This document shows, one piece after another, positions 28,801-60,379 of a stretch of DNA of 64,000 nucleotides. The DNA comes from Asterias rubens (lineage: Eukaryota). The position numbers were made by a program, and so were the translations under genes. Every line of letters starts with the position of its first letter. Position 1 is the stretch's first letter. The notes under the pieces were generated by a model that searched no databases, had not been told where the DNA came from, and worked only from the letters and a program-made list of their open reading frames with translations. Location of the stretch: the NCBI RefSeq assembly GCF_902459465.1, contig NC_047063.1, positions 2,542,001 through 2,606,000 on the forward strand, read 5' to 3'.

Positions 28801-31800
28801 CCGATCCGGCCTGTCAATCAAACTGTGCGCGTTCACCCATTTGACCAATCACAGCAATGACTGTGGTCAGACAAACTCGGTCATGCGTGCGCGTATATTT
28901 GGCACGCGCGGCAGAATCGTGCAGAATGTCATTGGGAGTGCTCGTACACACGTCTTGCTCACGTGCGCGGTGGGTGGAGCTTAGTGGAAAGCCGAAACGG
29001 TCCATTACCTTTGAAGAAAACTATTACAATATTTGAAATACTGACAATTGTGTTACAACAATCCCTTCACTCCACATAGAATCTGTTATTTTTGTAAAAG
29101 AAAATTGATGCTTTGGAACTTTACCCACCTGTGGGCATCCAGATAGGTCCAGATAAACCAGTTTCCGACAGCCTCTACCGTTTGCCAGGTATTGTAACCC
29201 TTTGTCACTGAAGCGTCTGCAGTATGCCAAGCTCATATACTGCAGGTTGCGGGACCATCTAAAAAATATCACAAATCAAAAACAGGGTTAAAAAAATAAT
29301 CCCTCTGAGCTGAGAACAGGGGATCCATAGAGAAGGTTCAAGGTTAGCCTGAACATCGGACGTCACACTTCGAGGCTCGTGAATTATGCAACCAACACAC
29401 ATAATCACCTTTGACCTCGGATCATTTCACTAAGTCTTCATGATTCTGGAGATTCACAGTTCAATGCGATGTACATGTGTATACATATAAACCAATACCT
29501 CTCCTCATCCCTGGAATTGGCAAATTTAAATGTGCTATATGCTAGCACATTTAAACGAGCCATAAATGAGCGTACATATTCATTATTCAATGTTTTCTAC
29601 GCGTGCACACACGTCTTTCGTCTTAAAGAATCACTTTGTTTTTGTTTTTTAAAAACGTGTTGTCATAAAACTACGCGCGCACGCATTTTCTGAGTCAATC
29701 AGCGTTATTTCCCAGTACATCCCATAGTGATGATAGGTATTGATACAGCGCGCTGCCCATGGTAGCGAGGCTGGGAGATATCAAATTTAATAAAAAATTA
29801 TAAAGTGAGGTTGGCTATACATCTGGTTCGACAAAGCCTGATGAAACAATACAATTAACACAATTATTAGAGTGCTCTTTCTCATCAAAGATGGTTACAC
29901 AGCGCTGATGAACAGAGTCAAGAGAACTAACTAAATAATACAGTTAGACGCGTTGGTCATTGTTCAAATCAATAAGCATTCTTAAAGCCATTGGACACTT
30001 TCGGAAAACAGTATTGTCCAAGGCCCACTCTTCGTGTTTATCACAACTTATATATAAAATAACAAACCTGTGAAAATTTAGGCTCATACACTCATCGGAG
30101 TCGGGAGAAAATAACGGGAAAACCCACCCTTGTTTCCGCATGTTTCGCCGTGTCATGACATGTGTTTAAAATAAATCCGTAAATTTCGATATCGAGAATT
30201 GATATTGGTTTAATGTTTTCTCAAAAAGTAAAGCATTTCATGGAATAATATTTCAAAAGAAACCTTTCACCATTACCTTCTGTATACCCTGCAAGTTATT
30301 TGTAAATCTGTGAACTTTTTTTTTCTTTTCTGAAAGTGTCCAATGGCTTTAAAATCATCCTAAAACTGTACTGTACTTTGAAATTGTGTTGTCATGAATG
30401 ATAAAGAAAAGTAATTACTTATAAGAGAGTAAAATCATGGAAGTCTACCGAGAGAAAAGAAACAACTTAAGACCAAGTCACACTGCAGCGATAACGATAA
30501 CGATCAAGACGCAAAGAGAACTCATTCTATTGGTTGAATGAGTGTGTGCGTATTCTGTGTGGAGCAATTCAACCAATAGTATGCGTTAACTCTTTGCGTC
30601 TTGATCGTTATCGTTATCGCTGCAGTGTGACTCGGCCTTTGAAGACAGTGGACACTATTGGTAATTGTCAAAGACTAGTCTTCTCATTTGGTGTATCTCA
30701 ACATTTGCATAAAACAAATCTGTGAAAATTTGAGCTCAATCGGTCGTCGAAGTTGCGAGATATTAATGAAAGAAAAAAACACCATTGTCACACGAAGTTG
30801 TGTGCTTTCAGATGCTTGATTTCGAGACCTCAAATTCTAAATCTGAGGTCTCGAAAGCAAATTCTGGGAAAATTACATCTTTCTTGAAAATTACTTCACT
30901 TTAGAGGGAGCCGTTTCTCACAATGTTTTATACTATCAACCTCTCCCCATTACTCGTCACCAAGTAAGGTTTTGTGATAATAATCATTTGAGTAATTACC
31001 AATAGTGTCCACTGCCTTTAAGCAGAACAAACAAAACCATGCACGTTTTACTTGTTACACCTACCTTCCAAGAAGCCTTAGCGTAGCATCGGTGATGTTG
31101 GTATGAGAGATGTTGAGATACAGCAAGGTCTGGCATCCCTCTGCAATGTCCTTCATCATGTCATCATTCACACCTCCACATTCAGATAGATTCAGATCTT
31201 GCAGGTTCCTACACTGACCTGCCGAGAACAATCAGAGCCAATGCTTACTAAAATGTCTGAAACCATTGCTTACTAAAATGTCTGAAACCATTGCTTACTA
31301 AAATGTCCGAAACCATACTTCAAATGTTAGGACCACACTCGGATAGATTCAGGTCTTCTGCAGGTTCCTACATTGACATGTCGAGAACAATCAGAGCCAA
31401 TGGTTACTAAAATGTCTAAACCCATTGCTTACTAAAATGTCTGAAACCATTGCTTACTAAAATGTCTGAAACCATACTTCAAATATTAGGACCACACGTA
31501 GATAGATTCAGATCTTGCAGATTCCTACACTGACCTGCATGGAACAATGACAACCAGGGCCCAATTTCATAGCGCTGCTTAGCGGCCGATTTTGTGCTTA
31601 CTGTGCAATTTCTATTTCATAGCGCTGCTAACCGTAAGCACACGAAAAGGCATGCTAACCTTCCGGTGCTTACCGCACAAAAATAAATGACGTCACAATG
31701 CAAATCCACGGTAAACACGAAATATGGCCACCCAATTTTCCTGCTAACCTGTGAAATACGATGACACACGCTGTAAAAAAAATCTTCTGAATTCAGATAA

Positions 31801-43800: not shown

Positions 43801-46418
43801 GGTTGGCAAAAACTCGGGCTGTGACTCAGGACCTACCCACCTGACTACTCCCATTAAAGTGTCAAGACTGGGACTCGAACCAACCTTCCATGACCAATTA
43901 TTATTATTATTATTATTAATATTATTATGATTAGTATTGTTTTATTAAAAATCAAACATAACAGCCAAAAGGCTGAATTGTGTTTAGGTTTGCACTATAA
44001 AAATACATTCAAACATCAAAAACCAGCAAATATACAATAAGAGATTATAAAAATAGAGTAGATTTGAATATAAAATTTAAAAATTGTAAGAAGATATACA
44101 ATACAAATATATTTACACAATGAAAACAAGATATCTACAGGCCAGTAAAATTATTGGTGATTGAGCAGCTCAACTAGGGAGGGGATACAACTGTTTTTGA
44201 AACGGTTAGTCCTACATTTAACTGAGCAAAGTTTATTGGAATTTCTAATTGAGCCCAAATTTTCACAGGTTTGTTATTTCATGCATATGTTAGGATACAC
44301 CAAGTGAGAAGATTGGTCTTTGACAATTACTAAACATGACCAGTGCTTTTGAATAAGTATTTCATAAACTACTCACCACTTGAGAGCTTCCAGTCCATGG
44401 ACAGTCTCTAATCTCATTTTCATCAGCTCCTTCAGCTTGGTAATGATGTATTCCATCGGATCATCGGGACACAAAACGGCTAGTCCGGTCAGGATGGCCT
44501 ACAAATATTCACAAAAACAGAACGTTTGTTTAAAGGCAGTGGACACTATTGGTAATTACTCAAAATAATTATTAGCATAAAACCTTTCTTGGTGACGAGT
44601 AATGGGGAGAGGTTGATGGTATAAAACCTTGTGAGAAACGGCTCCCTCTGAAGTGCCATAGTTTTCGAGAAAGAAGTAATTTTTCCACAAATTTGATTTC
44701 GAGACCTCAGATTTAGAACTTGAGGTCTTGAAATCAAGCATCCAAACTCACACAACTTTGTGTGACAAGGGTGTTTTTTTCTTTCATTATTATCTCGCAA
44801 GTTCAATGACCGATTGAGCTCAAATTTTCACAGGTTTGTTATTTTATGCATATGTTGAGATACACCAACTGTGAAGGCTAGTCTTTGACAATTACCAATA
44901 GTGTCCACTGCCTTTAAAGCCATTATACACTTTCAGTAAACAGTATTGTCCAAGTCCCACACTTATATACTTATATACTTATAACTTATATATAAAATAA
45001 CAATCCTGTGGAAATTTAGGCTCAATCGGACATCGGAGTCGGGAGAAAATAATGGGAAAACCCACTCCTGTTTTCGCGCGTTTCGCCGTGTCATGACATG
45101 TGTTTATAACAAATCCGTAATTCTCGCTACCGAGAATTTATATTGTTTTATCGTTTTCTCAAAAAGTAAAGCATTTCATGGACTAATATTTCAAGAGAAG
45201 TCTTTCACTATTACCTTCTGTAAACCCTGTAAATTATTTGTAAATCTGTGAACTTTTTATTTTATTTTTTTACCGAAAGGGTCCAATGGCTTTAAGGGAA
45301 AGTATACCTCGATATATGATAAAACTAATGTGATAAGTTAACTTCAAAAGGATGTCACACTTTTGAGTTGCAACAGAAAATTCAGAATGAGTACCATGTC
45401 CAAGCAGATAGAGTAATCCGAAACACAATTTCAGAAGCGTTAACAAAATTTGCTGGCATAAAAACTTATACAAATCTTTTTACATACCCAATCTTCAAAG
45501 TGACCTGGGCCCAATTTCATAGAGCTGCTAAGCACAAAAATTTGCTTAGCATGAAATTTCTTCCTTGATAAATACAGGTTTAACAACCAAATTTCAATGT
45601 GATTTTCAGGATAAGCAAACAAAAGCTGAATACCAGTAACAAGCACTTATGTAACAAATGGAAATTTGGCTGGTAATCCTGTTTTTATCTGCCAGGAAGA
45701 AATTTCATGCTTAGCAAATTTTGTGTGCTTAGCAGCTCTATGAAATTGGGCCGAGGCCAGGGGGCATTGAGGCAATCATCCTCATTGCCTCCGTGAGCAA
45801 GCCGAGTTGAAACACAGTCCTCAGTATGTTTCTACTTGGTGTTTATACTTGCTTTAAAAAGCCCTTCTGTACAATCTGTGGCATTCTAAAATGGTTTTAT
45901 ATTCATAGCTATGATATTCATTATATTAAAGGCAGTGGACACTATCGGTATTACTCGAAACAATTACTAATATTAGCATACATGTAAAACCTTACTTGGT
46001 AACGAGTAATGGGGAGCTGTTGATAGTATAAAACATTCTGAGAAACGGCTCCCTCTGAAGACACGTACTTCCGAGAAAGAAGCAATTTTCCACGTATTTG
46101 ATTTCAAGATTTCAGAATTAGATTTTGTGGTCTCAAAGTTAAGCACCTGAAAGCACACAACTTCATGTAACAAAGCTGTTTGTTCTTTCATTATTATCTT
46201 GCAACTTCGATGACTAAGTTGAGCTCAAATTTTCACAGGTTTGTTTTTGTGTGCATATATTGAGATACACCAAGTTAGAAGACTGGTCTTTGACAATTAC
46301 CAATAGTGTCCGGTGTCTTTAAAGATTGCTGATTCATTCTTACCTCATACACATCAGGAACTTTGTGAAGCCGAAGATATTTCCGAATCTCAGGATCTAC
46401 ACCTTTTAATGAGGCCAT
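19844..46418 (-). CDS. FBXL13: F-box and leucine-rich repeat protein 13 (dynein regulatory complex subunit 6), 19 coding exons, about 913 aa
   Basis: Exons 46418-46344, 44498-44377, 42932-42839, 38648-38581, 37753-37599, 35884-35775, 34316-34215, 33570-33475, 32649-32624, 32014-31905, 31218-31065, 29258-29129, 28414-28195, 27485-27323, 25580-25461, 23529-23403, 22654-22436, 21098-20935, 20330-19844; all GT-AG, phases consistent, 2742 nt in total. N-terminus MASLKGVDPEIRKYL..ILTGLAVLCPDDP; F-box DISLLPRKLAIKIFSYLDL..W; LRRs such as NLQYMSLAYCRRFSDKGLQYL..KLVYLDLSGC typical of FBXL13. Confidence 0.95.
20321..20500. repeat. About 101 bp tandem duplication of the FBXL13 terminal-exon acceptor
   Basis: GCTCTTTCAAAGGAAAT.GGGACAAGAA occurs twice, 101 bp apart. 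Confidence 0.85.
21153..21536 (+). mobile_element. Kolobok/T2-like MITE family A
   Basis: TTAA TSDs, full TIRs and the conserved body. Confidence 0.85.
21548..21751. mobile_element. MITE with about 40 bp TIRs (Harbinger/ISL2EU-like)
   Basis: AGGGACTTTTCGTTTTCGACGACGGATGGTTCTGCGACGG mirrored at the right end. Confidence 0.7.
22259..22396. other. Assembly gap (138 N) in FBXL13 intron 17
   Basis: Run of N characters. Confidence 1.
22790..23175 (-). mobile_element. Kolobok/T2-like MITE family A (reverse orientation)
   Basis: TTAA TSDs; body is the reverse complement of family A. Confidence 0.85.
24390..24585. mobile_element. PIF/Harbinger-like MITE
   Basis: GGCCCAATTT.ATAGAGCTGCT left TIR, GAAATTGGCCC right TIR, CWG flanks. 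Confidence 0.6.
28798..29003 (+). mobile_element. AT-flanked MITE (ISL2EU/Harbinger-like); second copy at 55560-55765
   Basis: Two highly similar 200 bp copies, AT|GGACCGATCCGGC..GCCGGAACGGTCC|AT. Confidence 0.7.
29982..30352. mobile_element. Kolobok/T2-like MITE family B
   Basis: TTAA|AGCCATTGGACACTTTCG..GAAAGTGTCCAATGGCT|TTAA. Confidence 0.85.
30469..30638. mobile_element. Short palindromic MITE
   Basis: GTCACACTGCAGCGATAACGATAACGATCAAGACGCAAAGAG mirrored almost perfectly at the right end. Confidence 0.7.
30638..31021 (-). mobile_element. Kolobok/T2-like MITE family A
   Basis: Family A body and TIRs; right TTAA intact. Confidence 0.8.
31181..31555. repeat. About 158 bp triplication of the FBXL13 exon 11 acceptor and exon start, with an internal 24-25 bp minisatellite
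   Basis: GATAGATTCAG.TCTT..GCAG.TTCCTACA.TGAC occurs three times; CCATTGCTTACTAAAATGTCTGAAA units repeat between the copies. Confidence 0.9.
32282..32496. mobile_element. PIF/Harbinger-like MITE; related copies at 32798-33065, 38311-38542, 42467-42709, 45508-45752
   Basis: TIR GGCCCAATTTCATAGAGCTGCT; identical CTG/CTG 3 bp flanks at the 32798 and 42467 copies. Confidence 0.75.
35303..35678 (-). mobile_element. Kolobok/T2-like MITE family A variant
   Basis: TTAA TSDs; TIR variant AGGGAAGGTACA. Confidence 0.8.
36770..37115 (-). mobile_element. Near full-length tRNA-Leu-derived SINE with (TTA)n tail; other copies near 2690-2985, 3040-3140, 16600-16830, 42190-42466, 47995-48150, 57682-57780, 59960-60220
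   Basis: Head resembling tRNA-Leu (GGCCGAGCGG..GTGGATTCGAATCCC), central GTGTCCTTGAGCAAGACACTT..CTCCACCCAGGGGTAAATGGGTACC, 3' GCGCTGTATAAGAAGCC(ATT)n tail like L2/CR1 LINE ends. Confidence 0.75.
39187..39328. mobile_element. AT-flanked MITE carrying two CTCF-like motifs
   Basis: AT|AGGAGACTTTC..GAAAGTCTCCC|AT with inverted arms. Confidence 0.65.
40809..41186 (+). mobile_element. Kolobok/T2-like MITE family A variant
   Basis: TTAA|GGGAAGGTACAC..GTACCTTCCCT|TTAA. Confidence 0.8.
42975..43327. mobile_element. Kolobok/T2-like MITE family B
   Basis: TTAA TSDs and AGCCATTGGACACTTTC TIRs. Confidence 0.85.
44530..45295. mobile_element. Back-to-back Kolobok-like MITEs: family A (44530-44917) and family B (44914-45295) sharing one TTAA
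   Basis: Junction CCACTGCCT|TTAA|AGCCATT; outer TTAA sites intact. Confidence 0.8.
45926..46322 (+). mobile_element. Kolobok/T2-like MITE family A
   Basis: TTAA TSDs; ends 21 bp from the FBXL13 first coding exon donor. Confidence 0.8.
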
Positions 46419-49264: not shown

Positions 49265-49630
49265 CACCAGCGATCCGCGCGCGCTCTGCTGACGCAAGGG
49301 TGCGTTTTGCGTTTTCCCCTCACATAGATATGGAATGTTGTGGGTTAGGTGATTTTTGCGCGTCTTAAAAAGTTTCCAACTACGTCACACTCATTAACCA
49401 AAAAAAAGAAGCGTACCCATTAATACGTCATCGATATCTCTCACGCGGAAGAAGCCAAAGACATGGTAACAGCTATGTTTGTTTATGTTTGGCAATGAGT
49501 TCAAGTTTGCTTTTCAAGGTGTGAACACGAACTTTACTTTCGCGGCGTTTTTCAATGCAACTTAAGTGCGATATTTCTGCAAAGAACAATTTTCAGAAAG
49601 TGTTTTCAAGGATTTTAAGAATTCAGCAAG
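49265..49630 (+). promoter_or_regulatory. Probable promoter/5' UTR of the kinase gene
   Basis: Local CpG enrichment (CCGCGCGCG), CRE-like TGACG/TACGTCA, RFX-like half-site CATGGTAAC (49462-49470) and forkhead-like TGTTTGTTTA, ahead of the ATG at 49631 (A at -3) and the CG|GTAAGT donor. Confidence 0.45.
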
Positions 49631-52600
49631 ATGTTTCGTTTTGCTTCAGAATATGCTTCGGTGAAATTCCGGTAAGTCCCGTTTGAGTGTATTAATATTC
49701 ACACTTTTACATAGGTGTATCTTTTTTAATTCGACCTTGCAACTACATGTATATTGTCGATCAACTGCATGACGAAAACCTCCTCAGAAAATGTCTCTAT
49801 TTTGTGCTTGCTTTTCCCAAGCAAATTGTTGCTGCTCATCTTTCCGCCTTTTTTTTCGTTGGCATCGGCCAACCTTAAAGTATCAACTTTATTTTTTTAT
49901 TTAGACCTATCCCTACAGTATAAAATAAACAGCATATCCAAATGGCAAATGCTGTAAAAAAAAATGTTACAATTAATGTTATCAACTATGTCTCGTTTTG
50001 ACATAAACGCACTGTGCGTGATCTTGCTATCAAGCGTTATAGGGTCATGTTATACCTGCTAATTTACACGAAACCAGTTCCATGCCATCTCCGAAAAGAA
50101 AAGACATTTACATTTGAGTTGACATTTTTTTAGCGTGGATCGAAAGACACTGTTTGAGATATTACTGATGTGCTACAAAAGTTGGCATAGCTTGAACTGT
50201 AGCTCCAGTTTCCACCAAGATGCCTGTAAACGTTGCTTAGTGTGACAAAGCCCTTATTATTGTAGGGTAAAAGTATACTCGGCGATTTCAACTTTTTGGG
50301 GGACAATATAATAATCAGTAAATGCTCATCCTAACCATATAGATCCCTCAGTGGTCATCGCTTGGCAGGGTCCAAGCTGGGGTCACTGCCCCTTCCCCAA
50401 GAACCATCCCGGTTTCTGCCCGCCGTAATATCCCAGTCGGCATCAGCTAGTCAGAGTGAGACAGAAGTCCGAGAGGACCAATGTCTCCCGCCGCAAGCAG
50501 CACCAAGCTACCGGGTAGATCCCAAGTCGGTTAGACTGGTGGTAGAAAGCGGACAACAGCTACCTCAACTAACCCGATCGCTGTTCGACAGGTTGCGAAC
50601 AAGGTAAGAATCGTTTTGATAAAGAATCTAATCTCGCCATACTCAAAGAGTTGTGTGCCATTGAACTTTTCCCCGCGTTTTACATCACGGTCGCGGAAAG
50701 TTGACAACTTGGTCAGTTCACCATGCTTCCCCATTGGATTAAAATTGTGTCATTCTACAGAAAAGTTGCGGTACTTCTACCCCAACAAAAGTTGCGGTAC
50801 TTCTACCCCAACAAGTCCAATGGGAAAAAGAGCAGTTCACAAGAACAAATCAAAAGAATTACCACGGATAAAATAATGCGAGTCTCATGTTTACGAGAAT
50901 ATTAAGCGTCTTATTTGGGCGCAGTTAATGCAGTTCAAAAAACGGTGAAACAATACGGCGTTTGACGGGCATATTTTTTTTTTTTTTTTAAAGGGGGGTG
51001 GGGGGGGGGGGGGGACTTCTGAAACCCTGTTTCAGCCCCATGAGTAGGTAGCAATGGCAAAAGTTGATTGTAGCCCACGACTTAACTATGTATAGGCCTT
51101 GTGTGTCAGGCGACTTGCATAAAAAGTAATACATGTACATTCTAACCCCTGGACCACTAAGAAAATGTCTTTTTTTTCTTGCTCACAAATCCAGATTGTT
51201 CGGCAACCACAAAGTGGTTCCACTACCAGCGCTGACTGAGACTAGGTCCAGCGATTCGCTAGCCCGAGTTGTTAAGCACAAATCAGTGAAATGGAATTTG
51301 GTTCCAAACCAAAAGAGCCTCTCCAAATCTCCAAGGACATCATCCCTCCACAGGTAAGTCACTTAAATTTCATTTAGGAAAAAGAGAAAAAAACAGAAAA
51401 AAACTTTGACCACAGCATAAACTTTTTTTGTAACTCTAAAATGTTCAGATTTTTTGTTATCAAACATAAGAAGAAAAACTTATATAGCGCAATTCAGTCC
51501 TGCAAGACCTCTCAATGCGCTTTACAAAACAAAAGAACACACAAAACCTTTTGTTTATTTGAGAAAAAGTATTACAACAAATTACAACGATTTGCAATAT
51601 TTTTGACCCATGTGGACCTGTGTGAATACCAAACAAGTAAAATAGACTGTTTCTTCCATTATTGCTTTAATTAATATTCATTTGGTCATCGACACAAGAT
51701 ACAACAACGCCTACAGACAGTCAACATAACATGACATTGTAATAGTGATGCAAGGAAATTCACTGTTGAAAGCTCAAAAGTTGTTTTAGGTCCTTTTGAT
51801 TTTGATTCCGTGTTTTTAAATATTTTGGTTACAACTATTTTTCTTTTTTCTTTTTTCTTTTTAGCTCACAGGAGCAAAAAGTTTCTGGACGACCAGAAAG
51901 GGAAGGTCTCGAGAGAGGAGAGCAGGATGGGCGTAAAAGGCCAAAGAAAAGAAGATGTCGAGTGACTTCATCAGCCAAAGCAGTCTCTGTACGAGGATCA
52001 GTTGCTCCTCCTCAAGACGATAAGAAGATTAAAGATGAGAGGGAGGAGTTTGAAGAAGGAGTGCAGGATGAAGACCAAGACACCAGGATGGATCAAATGA
52101 TTCAAGACATGAGCAGCCCAGAGGTAAACAGTTTGGGAGTTGTTGATGTTATGTCTCCGAAAAGACGGAGGGTGTACAGTCTGTCACCATCACTCAACCA
52201 AACGAGCTTGTGCAGTCTGTCACCATCACTCAACCAAACGAGCTTGTGCAGTGTGTCACAAACACTCAACCAGTTGAGCCCGAGCTTTGGCAGCACACAA
52301 GCTCTTCATAATCAGACACCACTAGTCCTCACCTCAGCTTATACAGCTCCTCAGTGTGTCGACTTGCTCCCAAGAATCGACACACGCGACCTAGATCTCG
52401 TCTTCCGACAGAAGGGGTCATCCTACTCGCCAGTCACGCTCGGACAGGGCGCCAACGGCCAGGTTATCCTGATGCAGAGGCGCTCTGACAACAGTCTCGT
52501 CGCCGTCAAGCATCTAACCCACACGGGAAACCAATATGCAGCCAACGAAGAATTGACCAGGGAGACACAGGCAATGAGCGCCGTCTCCTCCAGTACAGCC

Positions 52601-53245
52601 TTTCCAAAACTTTTAGGAGTCGTGAACCGCAACTCATTCGCCATGGAGTTCATTGGCACCCTCGATCAAAAGACATCTTGGAGTGTGCTTGAAGCTTTCA
52701 GCCCTCCGAGACTATTGAAGTCACAGGATTGGTTGAAAGTGTGTATTGACATCACCAAAGGTCTCATGGATATGCATGCTGCAGGCTGGACCCACAATGA
52801 TTTGCATAATGCAAACGTCATGGTGTTGCGTGACACCCCAGACCAATCAGGAACATGGGAGGGCAAGATCATCGATCTTGGGTGTGCATCTCGCATAAAC
52901 GACCCTCCCCCTGTAAGATACCTCAGTGCAGAAGACCAAAAACACTGCTTCAAGTACTGCGGCCAGCTGGCACCTGAGATCGTCGAAGGCAGAGCCACAT
53001 TCAGTCCCCTATCGGATGTCTTTAGTCTAGGGGTGGTTTTCAGAGACATAGCTCGATCGAGCAGACATCTTTCTCATTTGAAGTCCTTGGGTAAACGATG
53101 CAGTCATCCGTTGCCAAAGACGAGACCAGCAATGGGACAAGTGTTGCAAGAACTCACATCGATGTTGAAGAGCCACAAAAACACTCCTCCCAAATCACGC
53201 ATAGGAAGTCTCTACCAAGCTGTAAAGCACCACATTCGACCATGA
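49631..53245 (+). CDS. Atypical non-RD protein kinase (TKL-like fold) with long low-complexity N-terminus, 4 exons, about 613 aa
   Basis: Exons 49631-49671, 50343-50603, 51195-51353, 51865-53245; three GTAAG..AG introns, all phase 2, open frame throughout (1842 nt). Kinase motifs in the last exon: LGQGANGQV, VAVK, alphaC Glu (EELTRE), HNDLHNAN, KIIDLG, LAPE, SDVFSLG, RPAMGQV. The kinase exon is secure; the 5' exons are inferred from splice signals and phase only. Confidence 0.85.
52177..52284 (+). repeat. 36 bp coding tandem repeat (SLSPSLNQTSLC x2 plus a degenerate third copy)
   Basis: CAGTCTGTCACCATCACTCAACCAAACGAGCTTGTG repeated exactly twice. Confidence 0.9.
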
Positions 53246-56020
53246 ATCTATATTCACAGACAATAATGATGGTAAATTTATGTTAGCATAATTAGTCAAC
53301 AAAAAGACTGGATGAAGGGGGGAAGCTCTGCGTTTACAAAACTAAAAGCCACAATCATGTTGTAGTTTTTTCTGAGCAACCAAAATTCCAGTTGCGGTAT
53401 GAAATACAAATTATTGCCAACAATTTAAACCCCAGAGTTTGCAGGGTTTTTTTTTGTATGGGAGTCGACTTGAAGACTATAATCACTCAAAATAATTATA
53501 AGTTATCTTTCTGTGATACTAATTTATTCAGCCTTTTGTCAGTGATTCGATTCGATAAAAAAACGCCACTAACCAAATCATTTCTTTAAAATATATCTTT
53601 TTATTTCAATCTAAATTTGCTTGTTACTTTATGCATCAATTCAAGTGAAAATAACTATAACTGGTTTAGCATTGACAAAATGATATCACTCACCCGGAAG
53701 ATTTGTTTAAAAAAATAAGGATATAAAAAAAACAATAAGCAACAGAGATCATTTCCTCTTAACAAAAACTACTTGTTGCTATTAGGAAAAAAAAGAGTTA
53801 AGGTTAAAAGCATTTTCGAAATCAAGGCTTAGTTTCTGGTTAGGTCACTCTGCCATTTTGAAACCGTGTGTCTACAGCACATGGCATCAAAATGGCTAAA
53901 AGTGACGCAGCCGATCTAAAACTCATGGTTTCCAAAATGCCTGCATGGGTCTAGCGGAGCTTGTCAAAGCTAAGCCACAACAGTTAAACACAAAACAATA
54001 AACTTATTATATATTAAGTAATTTTTTAAGAAAGTTTTATACAAAAAAATGATTGTTATTTCACTTAAATTGTTTTCAATAAAAGAGTTGTTCATAAATT
54101 TTGGACGCTGATTGAAATAAAATTACAATTATTACTAAATTGAATGTCTCTTTTGAAAATTTCTTTCATGACAAATCTTTTGCTTTCAAGGGTATCGAAA
54201 TGTCCCTAATATCGATAGAACAAGGGCCTCATTATTTTTTATGTTTCGTCTTTGTAGTCTTTAATTTCATAATCTTACGCAAAAAATCATTAATGTCACA
54301 AGAACTGTGTCGACTGGTGTAAGTGCCGCCTACCTCTTAGACATTTTTCAATGGGCCAACGGAGGCAAAGACTTTTGGTTTGCTTTTTAGCTCATTTGGG
54401 GGGGGGGGGCATTCGCAAGAAAGAGGGGAAAGGGTTCAGAGTAAAGGAGGGGAGGGTCAAGGCACCCCCTTCCCAACCCTTATACACCACTGATACATAT
54501 TTAACCGAGGACCTTAACAAAAGCGAACAATGTCAACGTTTGGCAGGTGATCTGCAGTTTGTTTTTCATGTACAAAACACGTGGGAACATCCCTCAAAAA
54601 ACCTAACAAATAGGATGTAGGGACATTGCTAAAAAAAACTGTTTGATCTTGTGAACAGAGACCAAAAGAGTCCATACAATGTTGGGACTTGAAACACTTG
54701 AAAAAAAAGGTTAAACGCACTTTTTCTAAAAAGAACATTTCTCTTTTATTAACTGCAAAGTGTGCCCTGTGCCGAGGTGAGCTCGTTATGCAAAACCAAA
54801 ATAAACCTACTTTGCAACTTATTGCGACCGATGGTGTTAAGCTAATTAATAAAACATGGAGTCGAATACATCTGTTTTCATTTGTAACGTGCTGGATCAA
54901 ACATTATTGAATTCATAAAATTTCAGATAACAAAACACAATGGACATGATCACTTATGGCTGATACTGTCTCAAACAGAGTCAAAGAAAAAAGGATCAGT
55001 TTCTTCTTAAAAGGAAACAGTGAATAGCAGTTACTTGTAAAATCATTTTTCAATTCAAATAAATAGAGATGATGCAGCACACGAGTAACAGGCAGGATAG
55101 TTGGTCCTTTGAAAAAAAGGAGGATCATTTAATCAAGTACAAAGCCGACCTATGATGTAGGCTGCAATAGACTTTAAGGCTACCTAATCACATCTTTTCC
55201 TATTTTTTTTTTATTTTGAAGGCAAAAAGTCGGAAATCAGACTAAACTAGGAAGATAATCATGCCAGGAGTAAGTTTCTTTCGGTAAAGTAGTCGTACCT
55301 TCATGTATAGTTTGGAAGGTAGGCATTGGTCAAACTCGCAAATTCAGCCCTTAAACCCACTTTAAAAATAGACAGTTTGGCTAGGCTAGGGCTAGGGTGT
55401 GGCTTCAGTCATCCCAGCCCGTTTGGTCATCCTGTGCCATCACACCAAAATGCAAAAAAAGCAGCAATCATGAGGGTAGTGCAGTTCCTTTTTTTTTTAA
55501 AGCCGCCAATGAGTCAAACTTCTCCGCACACAATGTCCATGCAATCAGGTTGAATGAATGGACCGATCCGGCCTGTCAATCAAACTATGCGCGTTCACCC
55601 ATTTGACCAATCACAGCAATGATTGTGGTCGGATAAACTCGGTCATGCATGCGCGTATATTTGGCACTCGCAGCAGAATCGTGCAGAATGTCATTGGGAG
55701 TGCTCGTACACATGTCTTGCTCACGTGCACTGTGGGCGGAGCTTAGTGAAAAGCCGGAACGGTCCATTGGTGTATCTTCTACAGACCAGCGTTCCCCCGT
55801 TGCCCAATTGGTAGTTAAAACACCCCGAGGACTAGTCACCATTCACTCAGTGTGGCCTGGCTGGCTAGTTCAGTGTTGAAAAGCATCCCTATTTCATTAG
55901 GAACTATGAACTTTTGTAAAAGTTTGCCTGGTAGAGAAGCCCAAGAATGATGGCCACACCTGTAAACAACATGCTCTACATCCATACATTTATCCTTCCC
56001 CTCCAAAACAATCTCACAAT

Positions 56021-56314: not shown

Positions 56315-59300
56315 TCATACTTCATCCACTTCCTGGTACCCGAACAACTCTTCCTCCAGTGAGGTTGACAGGCTGATTGGCTGACGGTCTTTGGGGAGTC
56401 TGGCTACCAGACGCTGTTGACGATGTGGTGGCCAAATGATATGAGAGGCACGAGCATGCACAAGTCCAAGCGCAACCTACAAATCAAAGAAACAGTCATT
56501 AAAATACAAATCTGTAAATTAGTTCCTATGTAGGATTTGACAGTTGGCATGGTATAATGGAAAGTATAATTAGGTGTTATTTACGGTAGTACCACGAGTC
56601 AATCTCTTTTGAGTAGTGTTGGTTCTGAAAAGAACCGTTGGCTGACAGCTCTACATTATGTTTGATCAGTATGCTCTTATCTTTCTCCTGAAGACGATAA
56701 GCATTGAAATACACTTACTCACAAGACAAACGACAATAAGCGCTCATTCAAATAAATACTATCTTACAGCCCTGAAATTCATCTTTGAGAGGGAAAGGCC
56801 ATTTTCACTTTGGATAGGGATAGATAGATAGATAGATAGATAGTTTATTTCTTGTTACATTCGTGGGCAACGGCCAAATTCCTGCAAGTTTATATAAAAA
56901 ATATATCGCCATTGGAGGCTATATTAAAATTTACAAAGAGGGGGCATTTCCATTGTAAATATTTGAAAGTTTACGGGACACTTTTGAAGGGGCACCAAGG
57001 CCGCGGCCTCTTTGGCCTCTGTGTATTCCAGGCCTGATCTCAACATGTGTAAAGAGTTTGTTCTCATTTTGATTCAGTTCTTATAACAACATGGACAAAG
57101 TGTTGAGGGGTCCATTTTCACAAAGAGCCTAGGAGTTATACAAAACGTATGGCTCCTCCCAATTTAGGACGATTAACTCGTCCTAACTCAAGATGAAATT
57201 AATCTTAACTCTTTGTGAAATCCACCCCAGGGGCCAGCCGTCGATTTCACAAAACTCTTCCTAACTTAAGACTAATCTTAGGACTTAAGGACGAGTCCCA
57301 ACCCTGCACTGTAGCATGCAGCCCTTAACATTAATCCTAAGTTAGGACGAGTTACTCATCCTAACTCGAGATAAGACGAGTCCTAACTCTTTGTGAAATC
57401 GACCCCAGGTCCCATAAAACCCCCCCTTTTTTTCCTCAAACATTTGAGCCCCGCCCCTTGCTAAGAAGTTATACAATGCATGTAGGAACTCACTGGTCCA
57501 AAATAGTTACTGTCTAGACTGACACTATGATGGTCGCCCTCTATCCAACAATGGCCCTCAGGTACCGTCACGTAACGATTCTTGTAGCTTAACGTTCTAA
57601 TAAAACAAACAAAGAAAAACACGGCGAACTAAATTAAAGCTACCAAGTACCAGGGTAATTATTTCAAAGATTTCAAGTGGGGTGTCATGGTCAAGCAGTT
57701 CAGAATATCAGGTTCAAGTTATGGTGGTTAAGACACTGGGGTGTGGGTTCGAATCCCGATTAAGATCATGACACTTGTTTATGTTTTAAATCTTCAAACC
57801 CATAGCACACAATATATACTGAAAAAGTCACAATCATAGTATAATTACATTACACAATGCACAGTGAAAAAAAGTCACAAAAAGGTCAGCACACACGAGG
57901 CTAAGAGTAGCTACACGCCCACACATGATGCTGCCTAGCAATACACAAAATGACATGGTTTACAATTCGATCAAACTAGAGCCTTAGAAATCACAGTACT
58001 TAAAGTCAGTGGACACTATTGGTAATTTCTCAAAATAATTATTTACATAAAACCTTTCTTGGTGACGAGTAATGGGGAGAGGTTGATGGTATAAAACATT
58101 GTGAGAAACGGCTCCATCTGAAGTGCCATAGTTTTCGAGAAAGAAGTAATTTTCCATGAATTTGATTTCGAGACCTCAGGTTTAAAACTTGAGGTCTCAA
58201 AATCAACCATCTAAACGCACACAACTTCGTGTGACAAGGGTGTTTTTTCTTTCATTATTATCTCGCAAGTTCGATGACCGATTGAGCTCAAATTTTCACA
58301 GGTTTGTTATTTTATGCATACGTGTATGTTGAGATACACCAACTGTGAAAGCTAGTCTTTGGCAATTACCAATAGTGCCCACTGCCTTTAAGAGATAATA
58401 TTAGAGCTCCAACACAAAAACAATACTCACAGATAGACCAATGAACTTATCCCTCCCAGATAAATAGATTTATACACAAATATAGAGCATAAACGGACCA
58501 AATAAGGTTCTTTCTAAAAGACGAATGGGAAATTGTCATGTGACAACCCCAAAGTTAACTTTTTAAAAGTTCAACACTGAGGGCGTAATTTGGATCCCTA
58601 CAATAACAACAAATAAACCACTAAACAGATGTTAAGATGACACACCGTATCGTATCACCTTCCAGTCCTATCACTCTCTTTACAAGAACTTCATCCGGGT
58701 GATTGGGGGATCTGAGAACAAAAGTTCAAATTGAAACTAAAGTTAGTAAACAACACCACATAAACCCAACTCCAATGGGAAAGGGATAATATGACATTGA
58801 ATAGTACTGTCGACAGCTGGTAAACATAATAATAATAAGTACTTATTAAGCGCAGCAGTGGTGCAAAACGGCCTTAAAGCGCTGGATACGAAATTAAGTA
58901 AATAAAAAAGACAAAAGCAAATAGTTATTAAAAAAACATTACATATAAGGCCTACACAAGAATATACACCCACTCAAAGGCAACTAAGAGGTAAAATACT
59001 AGTAAACAGAAAAGGCAGAATACAATATCAGGAAGTTATTTTAAAAATTAAAAATTACATCCAAATACAAGATAAAAATAAGCAGTTTGGGGGGGGGGGG
59101 GCACTCCCCACCCCACCACACTTGTTTAGGGTCCCCAAGGTGACCCCACAACAAAATCCAAATACACATGTGGTACTGCCCAAAAAAAAGAAAATAGCAT
59201 AGCCCCTAATGAGACCCCCACTGGAGATCAAGAGCAATACCACCAACCTAAATAGTGAAGGGAAGGGACTATTGCAACAGTGCCTCCCCTTCACCCAGTT

Positions 59301-60379
59301 TCGTCAGTTATCCTTAAATAAAAAAATTAAAAAAAAACAATAACAACCAGCTCAAACTCACGCTAAAGAGACGATATCACCTCGTTGAACATTGTAGTCT
59401 TTGAGTGCCCAGTGATTCAGGAAAATTACGTCTCTTCGCTGCTCATGGTCGGGATTGAAGACAGGCTGAATTCACACAATAAAAAAAACTCACTAATTTA
59501 TAAAAACAAGGATTAAAGGCAGTGGACACTATTGGCTACTGGGCCATATACATGAACTTCATTCCTTAAAGGCAGTGGACACTATTGGTAGTTACTCAAA
59601 ATAATTATTAGCATAAAAACCTTACTTGGTAACGAGTAATGGGGAGAGGTTGATAGTATAAACCATTGTGAGAAACAGCTCCCTCTGAAGTGGAGTAGTT
59701 TTCGAGAAAGAAGTATTTTTTCACATATTTGATTTGGAGACCTCAAGTTTAGAATTTGAGGTCTCGAAATCAAGCATCTGAAAGCACACAACTTCGTGTG
59801 ACAAGGGTGTTTTTTTTCTTTCATAGTTATCTCGCAACTCCAACGACCGATCAAGCTCAAATTTTCACAGGTTTGTTATTTTATGCATATGTTGAGATAC
59901 AGCAAGTGAGAAGACTGGTCTTTGACATTTACCAATAGTGTCCACTGGCTTTAAACCATCTCAGCTCGAGGGGCGGGGAGGGGGTAGGGGGGAGCATACA
60001 GACGGTGCTGCGAGTTACCGCGCTCCAAGCTAATCATTCACATAAACCATCTCTGCCCGGCCTCACCAGTTACCCATTTTACCCCTGGGTGGAGACAAGC
60101 TTATTGGTTAAGTGTCTTGCTCAAGGACACAAGTGTCACAACCGGGATTCAAACCCACATCCCGATCACTAAACCACCAGAACTTGAGTCCGATGCTCTT
60201 ATCCGCTCAGCCACAACACCACAATACAAAATGAAATTGACCTTTGTTTTATTTACCTGCATCGACTTGCCATCAACGGTTGCAAAATAGCCGACCTTGT
60301 CGAAGAATGTTAGAGAGCCACCTACTCCCAACGTGAACCCGCCGAGAAATATCTTAAGCGCCTTTCTTGCTGTGGTCAT
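56315..60379 (-). CDS. IMMP2L: Mitochondrial inner membrane protease subunit 2, 5 coding exons, 185 aa
   Basis: Exons 60379-60257, 59465-59362, 58711-58646, 57596-57494, 56476-56315. Catalytic Ser in GKSMQP and Lys in [11 protein letters not shown]; [41 protein letters not shown] matches IMMP2L. Confidence 0.96.
56819..56843. repeat. (GATA)n microsatellite
   Basis: About six GATA units. Confidence 0.9.
57107..57406. mobile_element. Two adjacent Harbinger-like MITEs (GGGGTCGATTTCACAAAG termini)
   Basis: TIR pairs ending CTTTGTGAAATC.ACCCC at 57228 and 57406; fragment also near 16400. Confidence 0.65.
58000..58391 (+). mobile_element. Kolobok/T2-like MITE family A
   Basis: TTAA TSDs, full body. 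Confidence 0.85.
59513..59954 (+). mobile_element. Kolobok/T2-like MITE family A preceded by an orphan left TIR
   Basis: TTAAAGGCAGTGGACACTATTGG at 59513 and again at 59566; right TIR ends at 59954. Confidence 0.8.

What the first reader, a model, noticed from the sequence alone, without database searches (positions are those of the whole stretch)
49631..53245. Orphan-looking non-RD kinase with an HNDLHNAN catalytic loop and shortened C-lobe, set among conserved single-copy genes
Seen: an intact kinase domain (about 52439-53160) keeps VAVK, the alphaC Glu, the catalytic Asp/Asn, APE and the alphaF Asp. It reads HNDLHNAN (52793-52816) instead of HRDLKxxN, DLG instead of DFG and GQGANG in the Gly loop, and only about 20 residues lie between DVFSLGVVF and the CxxxxPxxRP motif, so alphaG is largely missing. 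Established: WLKVCIDITKGL..MH and RPxMxxV resemble the TKL/Pelle-IRAK-RLK group; non-RD kinases in that group (IRAK1, RIPKs, plant PRR kinases) are enriched in innate immune signalling; the loop Lys normally contacts the gamma-phosphate and marks Ser/Thr specificity. Inference: a lineage-specific or captured kinase with unusual substrate chemistry, or a pseudokinase. I cannot assign it to a named family.
Basis: partly seen in the sequence, partly recalled or inferred. Interest (0 to 1): 0.8.

Follow-up and report, generated by a model that had tools for sequence, protein, structure and literature searches.

The report
Sea-star kinase with histidine catalytic loop
This is a real sea-star gene, seen spliced as RNA in a close relative, for a protein kinase that has a histidine where nearly all kinases have a lysine and that lacks one helix; it is not an orphan but one member of a large, unnamed kinase family found across echinoderms.

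Summary
A four-exon gene on the + strand (CDS 49631-53245, 613 aa) ends in an intact protein-kinase domain that reads HNDLHNAN, DLG and GQGANG. Only 36 residues separate the alphaF Asp from the RP Arg. A spliced RNA contig from a close relative joins exactly these exons.

The "orphan" reading does not hold. One-to-one orthologues with the same HNDLH loop exist in Asterias amurensis, Patiria and Acanthaster. Several paralogous HNDLH or HCDLH lineages occur in sea stars, and brittle stars carry H[GA]DLH. The wider family carries HNDLK, or HNDLAxRN in crinoids, and also occurs in sea urchins, cnidarians and a shrimp.

The non-RD HND/HCD triplet and the missing alphaG are traits of the whole family. 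Lys-to-His is a trait of a sea-star and brittle-star subclade.

In all 26 His-bearing sequences examined, the beta3 Lys, alphaC Glu, catalytic Asp and Asn, alphaF Asp and RP Arg are kept. The DxG Asp is kept in 25. dN/dS for the kinase part is 0.22.

Most likely it is an active kinase that needs no activation-loop phosphorylation, with His doing the Lys job, as has been suggested for haspin. A pseudokinase role is the main rival. No named family claims it: TK and TKL kinases all score alike. Substrate and biological role are unknown. It is a moderately interesting unnamed family, not an isolated oddity.

The parts
49552..49671 (+). Exon 1: 5' UTR of at least 79 nt, then the start codon at 49631 and the first 13.7 codons (MFRFASEYASVKFR), a start motif conserved in asteroid orthologues
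   Evidence: The RNA contig of run X1 begins at 49552 and joins 49671 to 50343. The N-terminus is identical or near-identical in P0002, P0003 and P0005.
50343..50603 (+). Exon 2, coding, low-complexity N-terminal region
   Evidence: GT..AG joints are present in the X1 RNA contig. The in-phase translation matches P0002.
51195..51353 (+). Exon 3, coding, low-complexity N-terminal region
   Evidence: The joints 50603>51195 and 51353>51865 are present in the X1 RNA contig and in the tblastn comparison.
51865..53445 (+). Exon 4: the rest of the N-terminal region, the whole kinase domain, the stop at 53243-53245, and at least 200 nt of 3' UTR
   Evidence: An open frame runs from 51866 to 53242. The RNA contig runs on to 53445.
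51932..51961 (+). Basic patch RKRPKKRRCR, which looks like a nuclear localisation signal; present in Asterias, not evident in Patiria or Acanthaster
   Evidence: Translation and comparison with P0002, P0003 and P0005. The function is inferred from composition only.
52177..52212 (+). 36-bp in-frame tandem duplication (SLSPSLNQTSLC twice), polymorphic
   Evidence: Contigs of runs X1, X5 and X7 skip it, and it is absent from P0001.
52439..53160 (+). Protein kinase domain
   Evidence: Pfam Pkinase 8.1e-22. AlphaFold model with pLDDT 93.8 and pTM 0.90. Z about 26 to SYK, FES, JAK3 and BRAF.
52439..52459 (+). Gly-rich loop LGQGANG (canonical GxGxxG spacing)
   Evidence: G1 and G2 are kept in 25 of 26 His-bearing relatives.
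52508..52510 (+). beta3 Lys (VAVK)
   Evidence: Invariant in 71 of 71 family rows.
52562..52564 (+). alphaC Glu (TRETQAM)
   Evidence: Invariant in 71 of 71 family rows.
52793..52816 (+). Catalytic loop HNDLHNAN: non-RD (Asn for Arg) and His (52805-52807) for the usual Lys; catalytic Asp and Asn kept
   Evidence: The His is shared by 26 of 71 family rows, which are from sea stars and brittle stars wherever the source is named. Asp and Asn are invariant.
52874..52978 (+). Activation segment from DLG to APE, with 32 residues from the DLG Asp to the APE Ala; it contains a conserved PPP turn and a predicted helix and has no GT motif
   Evidence: The helix lies at domain residues 187-196 in the model.
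53015..53128 (+). Shortened C-lobe: the alphaF Asp (DVFSLG) to the RP Arg is only 36 residues, and alphaG is missing
   Evidence: The spacing is 35-36 in 69 of 89 family sequences measured, against 61-78 in ordinary kinases. Profile alignments to JAK1 and EGFR skip the alphaG stretch. The model has alphaF at 213-228 followed by helices at 232-244 and 255-271.
53198..53236 (+). Conserved C-terminal tail helix (RIGSLYQAVKHHIRP region) after alphaI
   Evidence: It is conserved in all six asteroid orthologues. A helix is predicted at 277-289 with lower confidence.

Best explanation
SHOWN: The interval holds a real gene under purifying selection; its spliced RNA was seen in a close relative. It encodes a 613-aa protein with about 320 residues of low-complexity N-terminal sequence followed by a C-terminal eukaryotic protein kinase domain. 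The kinase belongs to an unnamed family with a TK/TKL-like fold. That family is present in sea stars, brittle stars, sea urchins and crinoids, and more distantly in cnidarians and a shrimp. The family hallmarks are an HND or HCD triplet (non-RD), a long activation segment with an internal helix and no GT or obvious phospho-acceptor motif, a normal APE, and a deletion of about 25 residues that removes alphaG. Within the family, a sea-star and brittle-star subclade with several paralogous lineages has replaced the catalytic-loop Lys with His, and the window's gene is one orthogroup of that subclade.

INFERRED: It is most likely an active phosphotransferase that needs no activation-loop phosphorylation. 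The beta3 Lys and alphaC Glu would hold ATP, the DLG Asp and catalytic Asn would hold Mg, and the HND Asp would act as base. The His, possibly protonated, would contact the gamma-phosphate in place of the Lys. Loss of alphaG and the odd P+1 region would mean that substrates dock in an unusual way. Substrate and pathway are unknown. The confidence given (0.6) is for the inferred part; the shown part I hold at above 0.9.
For: - Gene model and transcription: the spliced 2073-nt RNA contig and the in-phase 613-aa translation.
- Kinase identity: Pfam 8.1e-22, a model with pLDDT 93.8, and Z about 26 to SYK, FES, JAK3 and BRAF.
- Orthologues carrying an invariant HNDLH.
- Size and taxa of the family.
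- Tree: the window gene sits in a 7-row orthogroup (support 99), sister to a second asteroid paralogue group (97), inside a 20-row asteroid His clade (94).
- Catalytic residues in the 26 His-bearing rows: beta3 Lys, alphaC Glu, the HxD His and Asp, the catalytic Asn, the alphaF Asp and the RP Arg are kept in 26 of 26; the DxG Asp is kept in 25 of 26.
- Selection: dN/dS against A. amurensis is 0.22 for the kinase part and 0.49 for the N-terminal part of exon 4. Indels between relatives are multiples of three (12 and 36 nt).
- The alphaG deletion is family-wide.
- Precedent: haspin is described as a constitutively active kinase with alphaG deleted, in which ATP may be recognised by the HRD Asp and a nearby histidine (PMC3513839).
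Against: - No biochemical data exist for any member of the family.
- The Lys position changes state at least 7 times on the 71-row tree (K, H, Q, A, C). This could mean relaxed need for phosphotransfer.
- The dN/dS estimate rests on only 13 synonymous and 10 non-synonymous differences.
- The role of the His is argued from position in the sequence and from the haspin analogy. No model coordinates were available to measure its geometry.
- Spliced RNA was seen only in a close relative. Three RNA runs labelled with the likely source species held none of the sampled words.
Confidence: 0.6

Rival explanations
1. Pseudokinase or scaffold: the fold, and perhaps nucleotide binding, are kept, but phosphotransfer was lost when the catalytic-loop Lys went. 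The protein would act by binding partners through its kinase fold and its long disordered N-terminus.
For: The catalytic-loop Lys contributes strongly to catalysis in canonical kinases (established knowledge). The position is evolutionarily labile in this clade, taking H, Q and C. The alphaG docking site and the GT motif are missing.
Against: The three residues whose loss usually defines a pseudokinase (the beta3 Lys, the HxD Asp and the DxG Asp) are kept, as are the alphaC Glu, the catalytic Asn and the Gly loop, in essentially all 26 His-bearing sequences across sea stars and brittle stars. Such complete retention is not expected if catalysis were dispensable. Haspin is reported to work with a His near the catalytic Asp and without alphaG.
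Confidence: 0.25
2. A kinase with changed acceptor chemistry: tyrosine or dual specificity, or a non-protein substrate. On this view the Lys-to-His change marks a change in what is phosphorylated, not merely how.
For: Tyrosine kinases also lack the loop Lys (HRDLAARN). Crinoid members of this same family carry HNDLA(S/L/A)RN. The nearest solved folds are tyrosine kinases. There are weak sub-threshold Pfam matches of the catalytic-loop stretch to APH and Kdo small-molecule kinases. From my own recollection, the HxDxxxxN loops of choline and aminoglycoside kinases also lack the Lys.
Against: The window protein has no Arg two or four residues after the Asp-Leu, as tyrosine kinases do, and no P-x-x-W before APE. 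APE, alphaF, alphaH and alphaI are typical of protein kinases. The APH and Kdo matches are below the curated cut-offs.
Confidence: 0.1
3. A decaying, recently captured or transposon- or virus-derived kinase copy with no host function.
For: No named family claims it. Dispersed repeats are abundant around the gene.
Against: The 613-codon frame is intact across four exons with canonical introns. The RNA is spliced. The locus is collinear with the orthologous A. amurensis locus. Orthologues keep 54-57% identity with Patiria and Acanthaster. dN/dS is 0.22. The window holds no second copy of the kinase. The family is animal-wide.
Confidence: 0.02

Closest known systems
Haspin (GSG2), an atypical mitotic Ser/Thr kinase
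   Same: Haspin has a histidine close to the catalytic Asp that has been suggested to help recognise ATP. Its alphaG is deleted. It is described as constitutively active without activation-loop phosphorylation (PMC3513839). It is the best functional analogy for how a kinase with His for Lys and no alphaG could work.
   Different: It is not a relative. No Haspin_kinase Pfam match appears even at E up to 1. Haspin lacks APE and has DYT in place of DFG, plus N-lobe and C-lobe insertions. This protein has a normal APE, a DLG and an ordinary N-lobe.
TKL-group kinases (IRAK4, RIPK1, LIMK/TESK, RAF/CTR1, Dictyostelium TKLs)
   Same: These give the best profile-to-sequence matches among solved structures: IRAK4 106.7 bits, with CTR1, LIMK1, BRAF and RIPK1 at 102-104. 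They are also the best reviewed-protein fold matches (Dictyostelium TKLs, TESK2, LIMK1). The alphaH signature C-x(4)-P-x-x-R-P is shared. IRAK1 and the RIPKs are likewise non-RD (established knowledge).
   Different: No TKL family stands out, and BMX, TNIK and KIT score equally. There is no death, CARD, LIM or other accessory domain. alphaG is missing, the GT motif is missing, and His replaces the loop Lys.
Cytoplasmic tyrosine kinases (SYK, FES, JAK3, LCK)
   Same: These are the nearest solved folds: Z 25-26 with 230-240 residues aligned at about 2.2 A. Foldseek gives E about 1e-13. Like them, this protein lacks the catalytic-loop Lys.
   Different: There is no HRDLAARN or HRDLRAAN arginine and no P-x-x-W-x-APE P+1 loop. 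The triplet is HND, not HRD. There are no SH2 or SH3 domains. About 25 residues, including alphaG, are missing.
Uncharacterised echinoderm 'HNDLK' kinases, auto-named for example 'probable serine/threonine-protein kinase DDB_G0281745', 'RIPK1-like', 'mos-like' or 'LIM domain kinase 1-like'
   Same: These are true relatives. They share the HND/HCD triplet, the long activation segment with a helix and x-[LI]-APE, the 35-36 residue spacing from alphaF to RP, and a kinase domain at the C-terminus behind a long low-complexity region.
   Different: They keep the catalytic-loop Lys (or A-x-R in crinoids). They mostly have DFG or DMG and HLAPE, where the sea-star and brittle-star His clade has DLG and QLAPE.

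Membership tests
Eukaryotic protein kinase superfamily (Pfam PF00069/PF07714) | Significant match to the Pkinase profile over the whole domain | tested here: met
   PF00069 scores 8.1e-22 and 78.3 bits (cut-off 31.7) over profile positions 6-260 of 263. PF07714 scores 1.3e-16.
Eukaryotic protein kinase superfamily (Pfam PF00069/PF07714) | Bilobal kinase fold | tested here: met
   The AlphaFold model has pLDDT 93.8 and pTM 0.90. Z is about 26 at about 2.2 A to SYK, FES, JAK3 and BRAF.
Catalytically competent kinase (not a pseudokinase by the usual sequence rule) | beta3 Lys, HxD Asp and DxG Asp all present | tested here: met
   K47, D144 and D169 are present in the window protein and in 26, 26 and 25 of the 26 His-bearing relatives.
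Catalytically competent kinase (not a pseudokinase by the usual sequence rule) | Catalytic-loop Lys (HRDLKxxN), which contacts the gamma-phosphate | tested here: not met
   His stands at this position (52805-52807) and is invariant in the orthogroup.
Catalytically competent kinase (not a pseudokinase by the usual sequence rule) | Measured phosphotransfer activity | not testable with these tools
   This needs recombinant protein and an assay.
RD kinases | Arg before the catalytic Asp (HRD) | tested here: not met
   The window protein has HND. HND or HCD runs through the family.
TKL group | Kinase domain closer to TKL families than to other groups | tested here: inconclusive
   IRAK4, CTR1, LIMK1, BRAF and RIPK1 score 102-107 bits, but so do BMX, KIT and FGFR (TK group) and TNIK (STE group). 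Fold matches mix TK and TKL kinases.
IRAK/Pelle | N-terminal death domain before the kinase | tested here: not met
   Full-length orthologues P0002, P0003 and P0005 carry no Pfam domain other than the kinase at E up to 0.1.
RIPK | Death, CARD or ankyrin accessory domain, and specific kinase-domain affinity | tested here: not met
   No accessory domain is present. RIPK1 scores 102 bits, no better than unrelated kinases.
Haspin | Match to the Haspin_kinase profile; DYT in place of DFG; no APE | tested here: not met
   There is no such Pfam match at E up to 1. DLG and APE are present.
Tyrosine kinases | HRDLAARN or HRDLRAAN catalytic loop and a P-x-x-W-x-APE P+1 loop | tested here: not met
   The catalytic loop is HNDLHNAN and the P+1 region is KYCGQLAPE.
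Unnamed echinoderm/cnidarian HND kinase family without alphaG (defined here) | HND/HCD triplet, 31-35 residue activation segment ending x-[LIMV]-APE without GT, and 35-36 residues from the alphaF Asp to the RP Arg | tested here: met
   All three features are present in the window protein and in most of the 149 sequences extracted with the family profile. The tree places the window gene inside the family with starred support.

The most novel reading that the evidence does not exclude
The sea-star and brittle-star His clade would be a new working class of protein kinase. A histidine would replace the universal catalytic-loop lysine in catalysis, which could make the enzyme pH-sensitive or change what it phosphorylates, and substrates would dock without alphaG. 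The same family has also produced tyrosine-kinase-like HNDLAxRN loops in crinoids and Gln versions in sea stars. It would then be a natural series for studying how the catalytic loop, and with it substrate specificity, evolves.
Probability: 0.15. Interest if true: 0.6.

Novelty: new variant of a known kind. Interest (0 to 1): 0.4.

Why it matters
The catalytic-loop Lys is one of the most conserved residues in Ser/Thr kinases, and alphaG is a standard docking surface. Here a whole clade has lost both yet keeps every other catalytic residue, and it has done so in several paralogues across sea stars and brittle stars. That argues these kinases still work, by a slightly different route. This would add a second natural example beside haspin. 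It would also give kinase biochemists a family in which Lys, His, Gln and Ala-x-Arg versions of the same loop can be compared directly. For genome annotation, the family is currently given a scatter of misleading automatic names, such as RIPK1-like, mos-like, LIMK1-like and plant receptor-like kinase, and it deserves a family of its own. No function, immune or otherwise, can yet be assigned.

Tried and rejected
1. A single-sequence search of solved structures gave only weak, unspecific kinase matches: CDK8 at 1.7e-05 and RIPK1 at 3e-04.
2. The first AlphaFold run, with six sequences, was too poor to use (pLDDT 58). It was repeated with 62 family sequences.
3. The word-indexed homologue search found only the asteroid orthologues and suggested an orphan. 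The exhaustive profile search overturned this.
4. The second kinase gene 6 kb downstream of the Patiria orthologue is not a paralogue of this family by tblastn.
5. Microsynteny with Patiria: tblastx of the 22-kb Patiria locus against the whole window matches only the kinase exon. Neighbours are therefore not conserved at this scale, although the locus is collinear with A. amurensis.
6. Literature searches for the sea urchin kinome, for echinoderm TKL expansions and for the string HNDLK found no description of this family. The original sea-urchin kinome paper was not available to read.
7. Earlier notes of this scan hold nothing on this gene or on this kinase family.
9. A horizontal-transfer or bacterial origin was considered because bacterial Hanks kinases appear. 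It was rejected: they share 22-30% identity and score far below the animal family members.
Full report
**1. What is in the sequence**

The + strand between 49631 and 53245 carries a four-exon coding sequence. The exons are 49631-49671, 50343-50603, 51195-51353 and 51865-53245. All introns are GT..AG and the phases are consistent, giving 613 codons plus a stop.

- **Run X1.** Contigs of four public runs were laid on the region. Run X1 is an RNA run of a species about 97% identical to the window. It contains one 2073-nt contig, at depth about 75, that starts at 49552, joins exactly these four exons, and runs to 53445.
- **The other three runs.** They cover introns as well and behave as DNA.
- **Differences between relatives.** The X1 contig lacks 12 nt at 52050 and 36 nt at 52177-52212. 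Both are multiples of three.
- **The 36-nt piece.** It is a tandem duplication (SLSPSLNQTSLC twice). It is also absent from the DNA contigs of X5 and X7 and from protein P0001, so it is polymorphic.

**2. The kinase domain and the reported oddities**

The last exon holds a complete protein kinase domain (Pfam Pkinase 8.1e-22).

| Motif | Window coordinates |
|---|---|
| LGQGANG (Gly loop) | 52439-52459 |
| VAVK Lys | 52508-52510 |
| alphaC Glu | 52562-52564 |
| HNDLHNAN (catalytic loop) | 52793-52816 |
| DLG | 52874-52882 |
| APE | 52970-52978 |
| DVFSLG (alphaF) | 53015-53032 |
| RP | 53123-53128 |

The distance from the alphaF Asp to the RP Arg is 36 residues. Ordinary kinases that turned up in the same searches have 61-78.

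An AlphaFold model built on a 62-sequence family alignment is confident (mean pLDDT 93.8, pTM 0.90).

- Its N-lobe is normal.
- alphaC lies at domain residues 55-71 and alphaE at 118-137.
- A helix lies inside the activation segment at 187-196.
- alphaF lies at 213-228 and is followed directly by helices at 232-244 and 255-271, which correspond to alphaH and alphaI.
- A further tail helix lies at 277-289.

When the family profile is aligned to JAK1 and EGFR, it stops after alphaF and resumes at the alphaH 'C...P..RP' stretch, skipping about 45 residues of the target.

**3. It is not an orphan**

The quick word-indexed search found only sea-star proteins:

- a 91% identical protein of Asterias amurensis over the searched exon-4 protein (97% over the kinase part);
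- orthologues of Patiria miniata (57%) and Acanthaster planci (54%);
- three unnamed ENA proteins.

All six carry HNDLH(N/S)xN, and 118 columns of the kinase part are invariant.

An exhaustive profile search of 1.84 billion representative proteins then found 45 relatives below 1e-30 and 651 below 1e-10. Looking up names and catalytic loops gives this picture:

| Taxon | Species or sequences | Catalytic loop |
|---|---|---|
| Sea stars | Acanthaster, Patiria and A. amurensis each have several further paralogues (P0010/P0157, P0012, P0013, P0014, P0015/16/18, P0017) | HNDLH or HCDLH; one group has HCDLQ |
| Brittle star | Amphiura | HGDLH and HADLH |
| Crinoids | Antedon, Anneissia | HNDLK, and a clade with HNDLA(S/L/A)RN |
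| Sea urchins | Diadema, Lytechinus, Strongylocentrotus | many HNDLK members |
| Cnidarians | Paramuricea, Actinia | HNDIK (weaker members, 150-165 bits) |
| Shrimp | Palaemon | four tandem HNDLY domains |

Fold-cluster matches point the same way, though the organisms of those entries were not shown.

A maximum-likelihood tree of 71 domains places the window gene as follows:

- in a 7-row orthogroup (support 99);
- sister to the P0010/P0157 asteroid paralogue group (97);
- inside a 20-row asteroid His clade (94);
- that clade lies within a larger clade holding the brittle-star His sequences and a few Lys, Gln and Cys members.

The residue at the Lys position changes at least seven times on this tree.

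The family-wide traits are the HND/HCD triplet, the long activation segment ending x-[LIMV]-APE without a GT motif, and the 35-36 residue spacing from alphaF to RP. The Lys-to-His change is a subclade trait. None of these is private to this gene.

**4. Context**

The 23-kb A. amurensis locus is collinear with the window from about 37.9 kb to 62.7 kb. There the gene lies between an F-box/LRR gene and a Peptidase_S26 gene. The Patiria orthologue has different neighbours, SIR2 and DnaJ, and shares nothing else with the window. The window holds no second copy. Full-length orthologues carry no Pfam domain other than the kinase.

The N-terminal half is low-complexity and poorly conserved, with two exceptions:

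- the first 20 or so residues (MFRFASEYASVKFRSLSG), which recur in altered form at the start of some paralogues;
- a basic RKRPKKRRCR patch specific to Asterias.

**5. Is it under constraint, and is it likely to work?**

Against A. amurensis, dN/dS is 0.22 for the kinase part (13 synonymous and 10 non-synonymous differences) and 0.49 for the N-terminal part of exon 4. These counts are small.

The deeper comparison is more telling. In all 26 His-bearing sequences of the tree, the following are kept in 26 of 26:

- the beta3 Lys;
- the alphaC Glu;
- the HxD His and Asp;
- the catalytic Asn;
- the alphaF Asp;
- the RP Arg.

The DxG Asp and the first two Gly-loop glycines are kept in 25 of 26, and the APE Glu in 24 of 26.

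A fold kept only as a scaffold would be expected to lose some of these. The usual sequence rule for a pseudokinase (loss of the beta3 Lys, the HxD Asp or the DxG Asp) is not met.

Haspin offers a precedent. A review describes it as a constitutively active kinase whose alphaG is deleted and in which ATP may be recognised by the catalytic Asp and a nearby histidine (PMC3513839). Haspin is not a relative, however: there is no Haspin profile match, and this protein has a normal APE and a DLG.

I therefore judge an active kinase that needs no activation-loop phosphorylation, with His doing the Lys job, the most likely reading (about 0.6). A pseudokinase or scaffold role is the main rival (about 0.25). 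A change of acceptor chemistry is a minor rival (about 0.1).

Four columns track the Lys-to-His change: Lys166, three residues before DLG; Gln199, in QLAPE against HLAPE; DLG against DFG; and Trp140. Kinship was not corrected for, so these are leads only.

**6. Comparison with known families**

Profile-to-sequence scores against solved structures are flat: IRAK4 106.7 bits; BMX 105.9; TNIK 105.5; KIT 105.4; a plant lectin receptor kinase and CTR1 103.9; LIMK1 102.5; BRAF 102.4; RIPK1 102.1.

Fold searches give tyrosine kinases and TKL kinases side by side:

- FGFR, LCK, JAK3, IRAK4 and LIMK1;
- Dictyostelium TKLs, TESK and LIMK;
- SYK, FES, JAK3 and BRAF at Z about 26.

The family thus sits in the TK/TKL neighbourhood but belongs to no named family. 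Database names for relatives are a scatter of automatic guesses: 'DDB_G0281745', 'RIPK1-like', 'mos-like', 'LIM domain kinase 1-like' and 'cysteine-rich receptor-like protein kinase 5'. I found no paper describing the family.

**7. Verdict**

- **Observation:** confirmed.
- **Interpretation:** partly supported.
- **Refutation condition:** This is half met: the orthologues exist, but the family has no name.
- **Novelty:** a new variant of a known kind. This is an undescribed kinase family whose sea-star and brittle-star branch swaps the catalytic Lys for His.
- **Interest:** moderate (0.4). It is a useful natural series for kinase mechanism and a correction for annotation, but no function is known and the gene is an ordinary member of its family.

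Noticed in passing
window 52177-52212: A 36-bp in-frame tandem duplication doubles SLSPSLNQTSLC in the disordered region. It is absent from contigs of three other runs and from protein P0001, so it is polymorphic or assembly-individual-specific.
   Followed up: partly
window 51094-51129 (intron 2): A short stretch with summed contig depth of about 10,000-39,000 in the DNA runs and many loose ends on both sides: a very high-copy short repeat.
   Followed up: no
window, e.g. 21153-21536, 22788-23175, 30636-31024, 44530-44917, 58000-58400, 59552-59955: A dispersed repeat of about 390 bp is present in at least ten copies in the window, on both strands, and also in the A. amurensis locus L002, at 72-93% identity. 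It is probably a SINE- or MITE-like element.
   Followed up: no
relatives P0059, P0079, P0085, P0093, P0137 (crinoids Antedon and Anneissia where named): A well-supported clade of the same kinase family carries tyrosine-kinase-like catalytic loops, HNDLA(S/L/A)RN, though without a tyrosine-kinase-type P+1 loop. This may be an independent move towards TK-like chemistry.
   Followed up: partly
relatives P0060 (shrimp Palaemon carinicauda, 2846 aa), P0062, P0107, P0123: These are proteins with three to four tandem kinase domains. Several of those domains also have the short spacing of 35-39 residues from alphaF to RP, so kinases without alphaG may be more widespread than this family.
   Followed up: no
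L001 17733-20816 (Patiria miniata): A second, unrelated 307-aa kinase gene lies 6 kb downstream of the Patiria orthologue. tblastn with the window protein does not detect it.
   Followed up: partly
window 49631-49671 plus 50343-50365; relatives P0157, P0016, P0018: The first 20 or so residues (MFRFASEYASVKFRSLSG) are conserved among asteroid orthologues. They recur in altered form (MFRYGRELI.., MYNYARAYA..) at the start of paralogues whose N-terminal regions are otherwise unrelated. This may be a shared targeting or regulatory motif.
   Followed up: no
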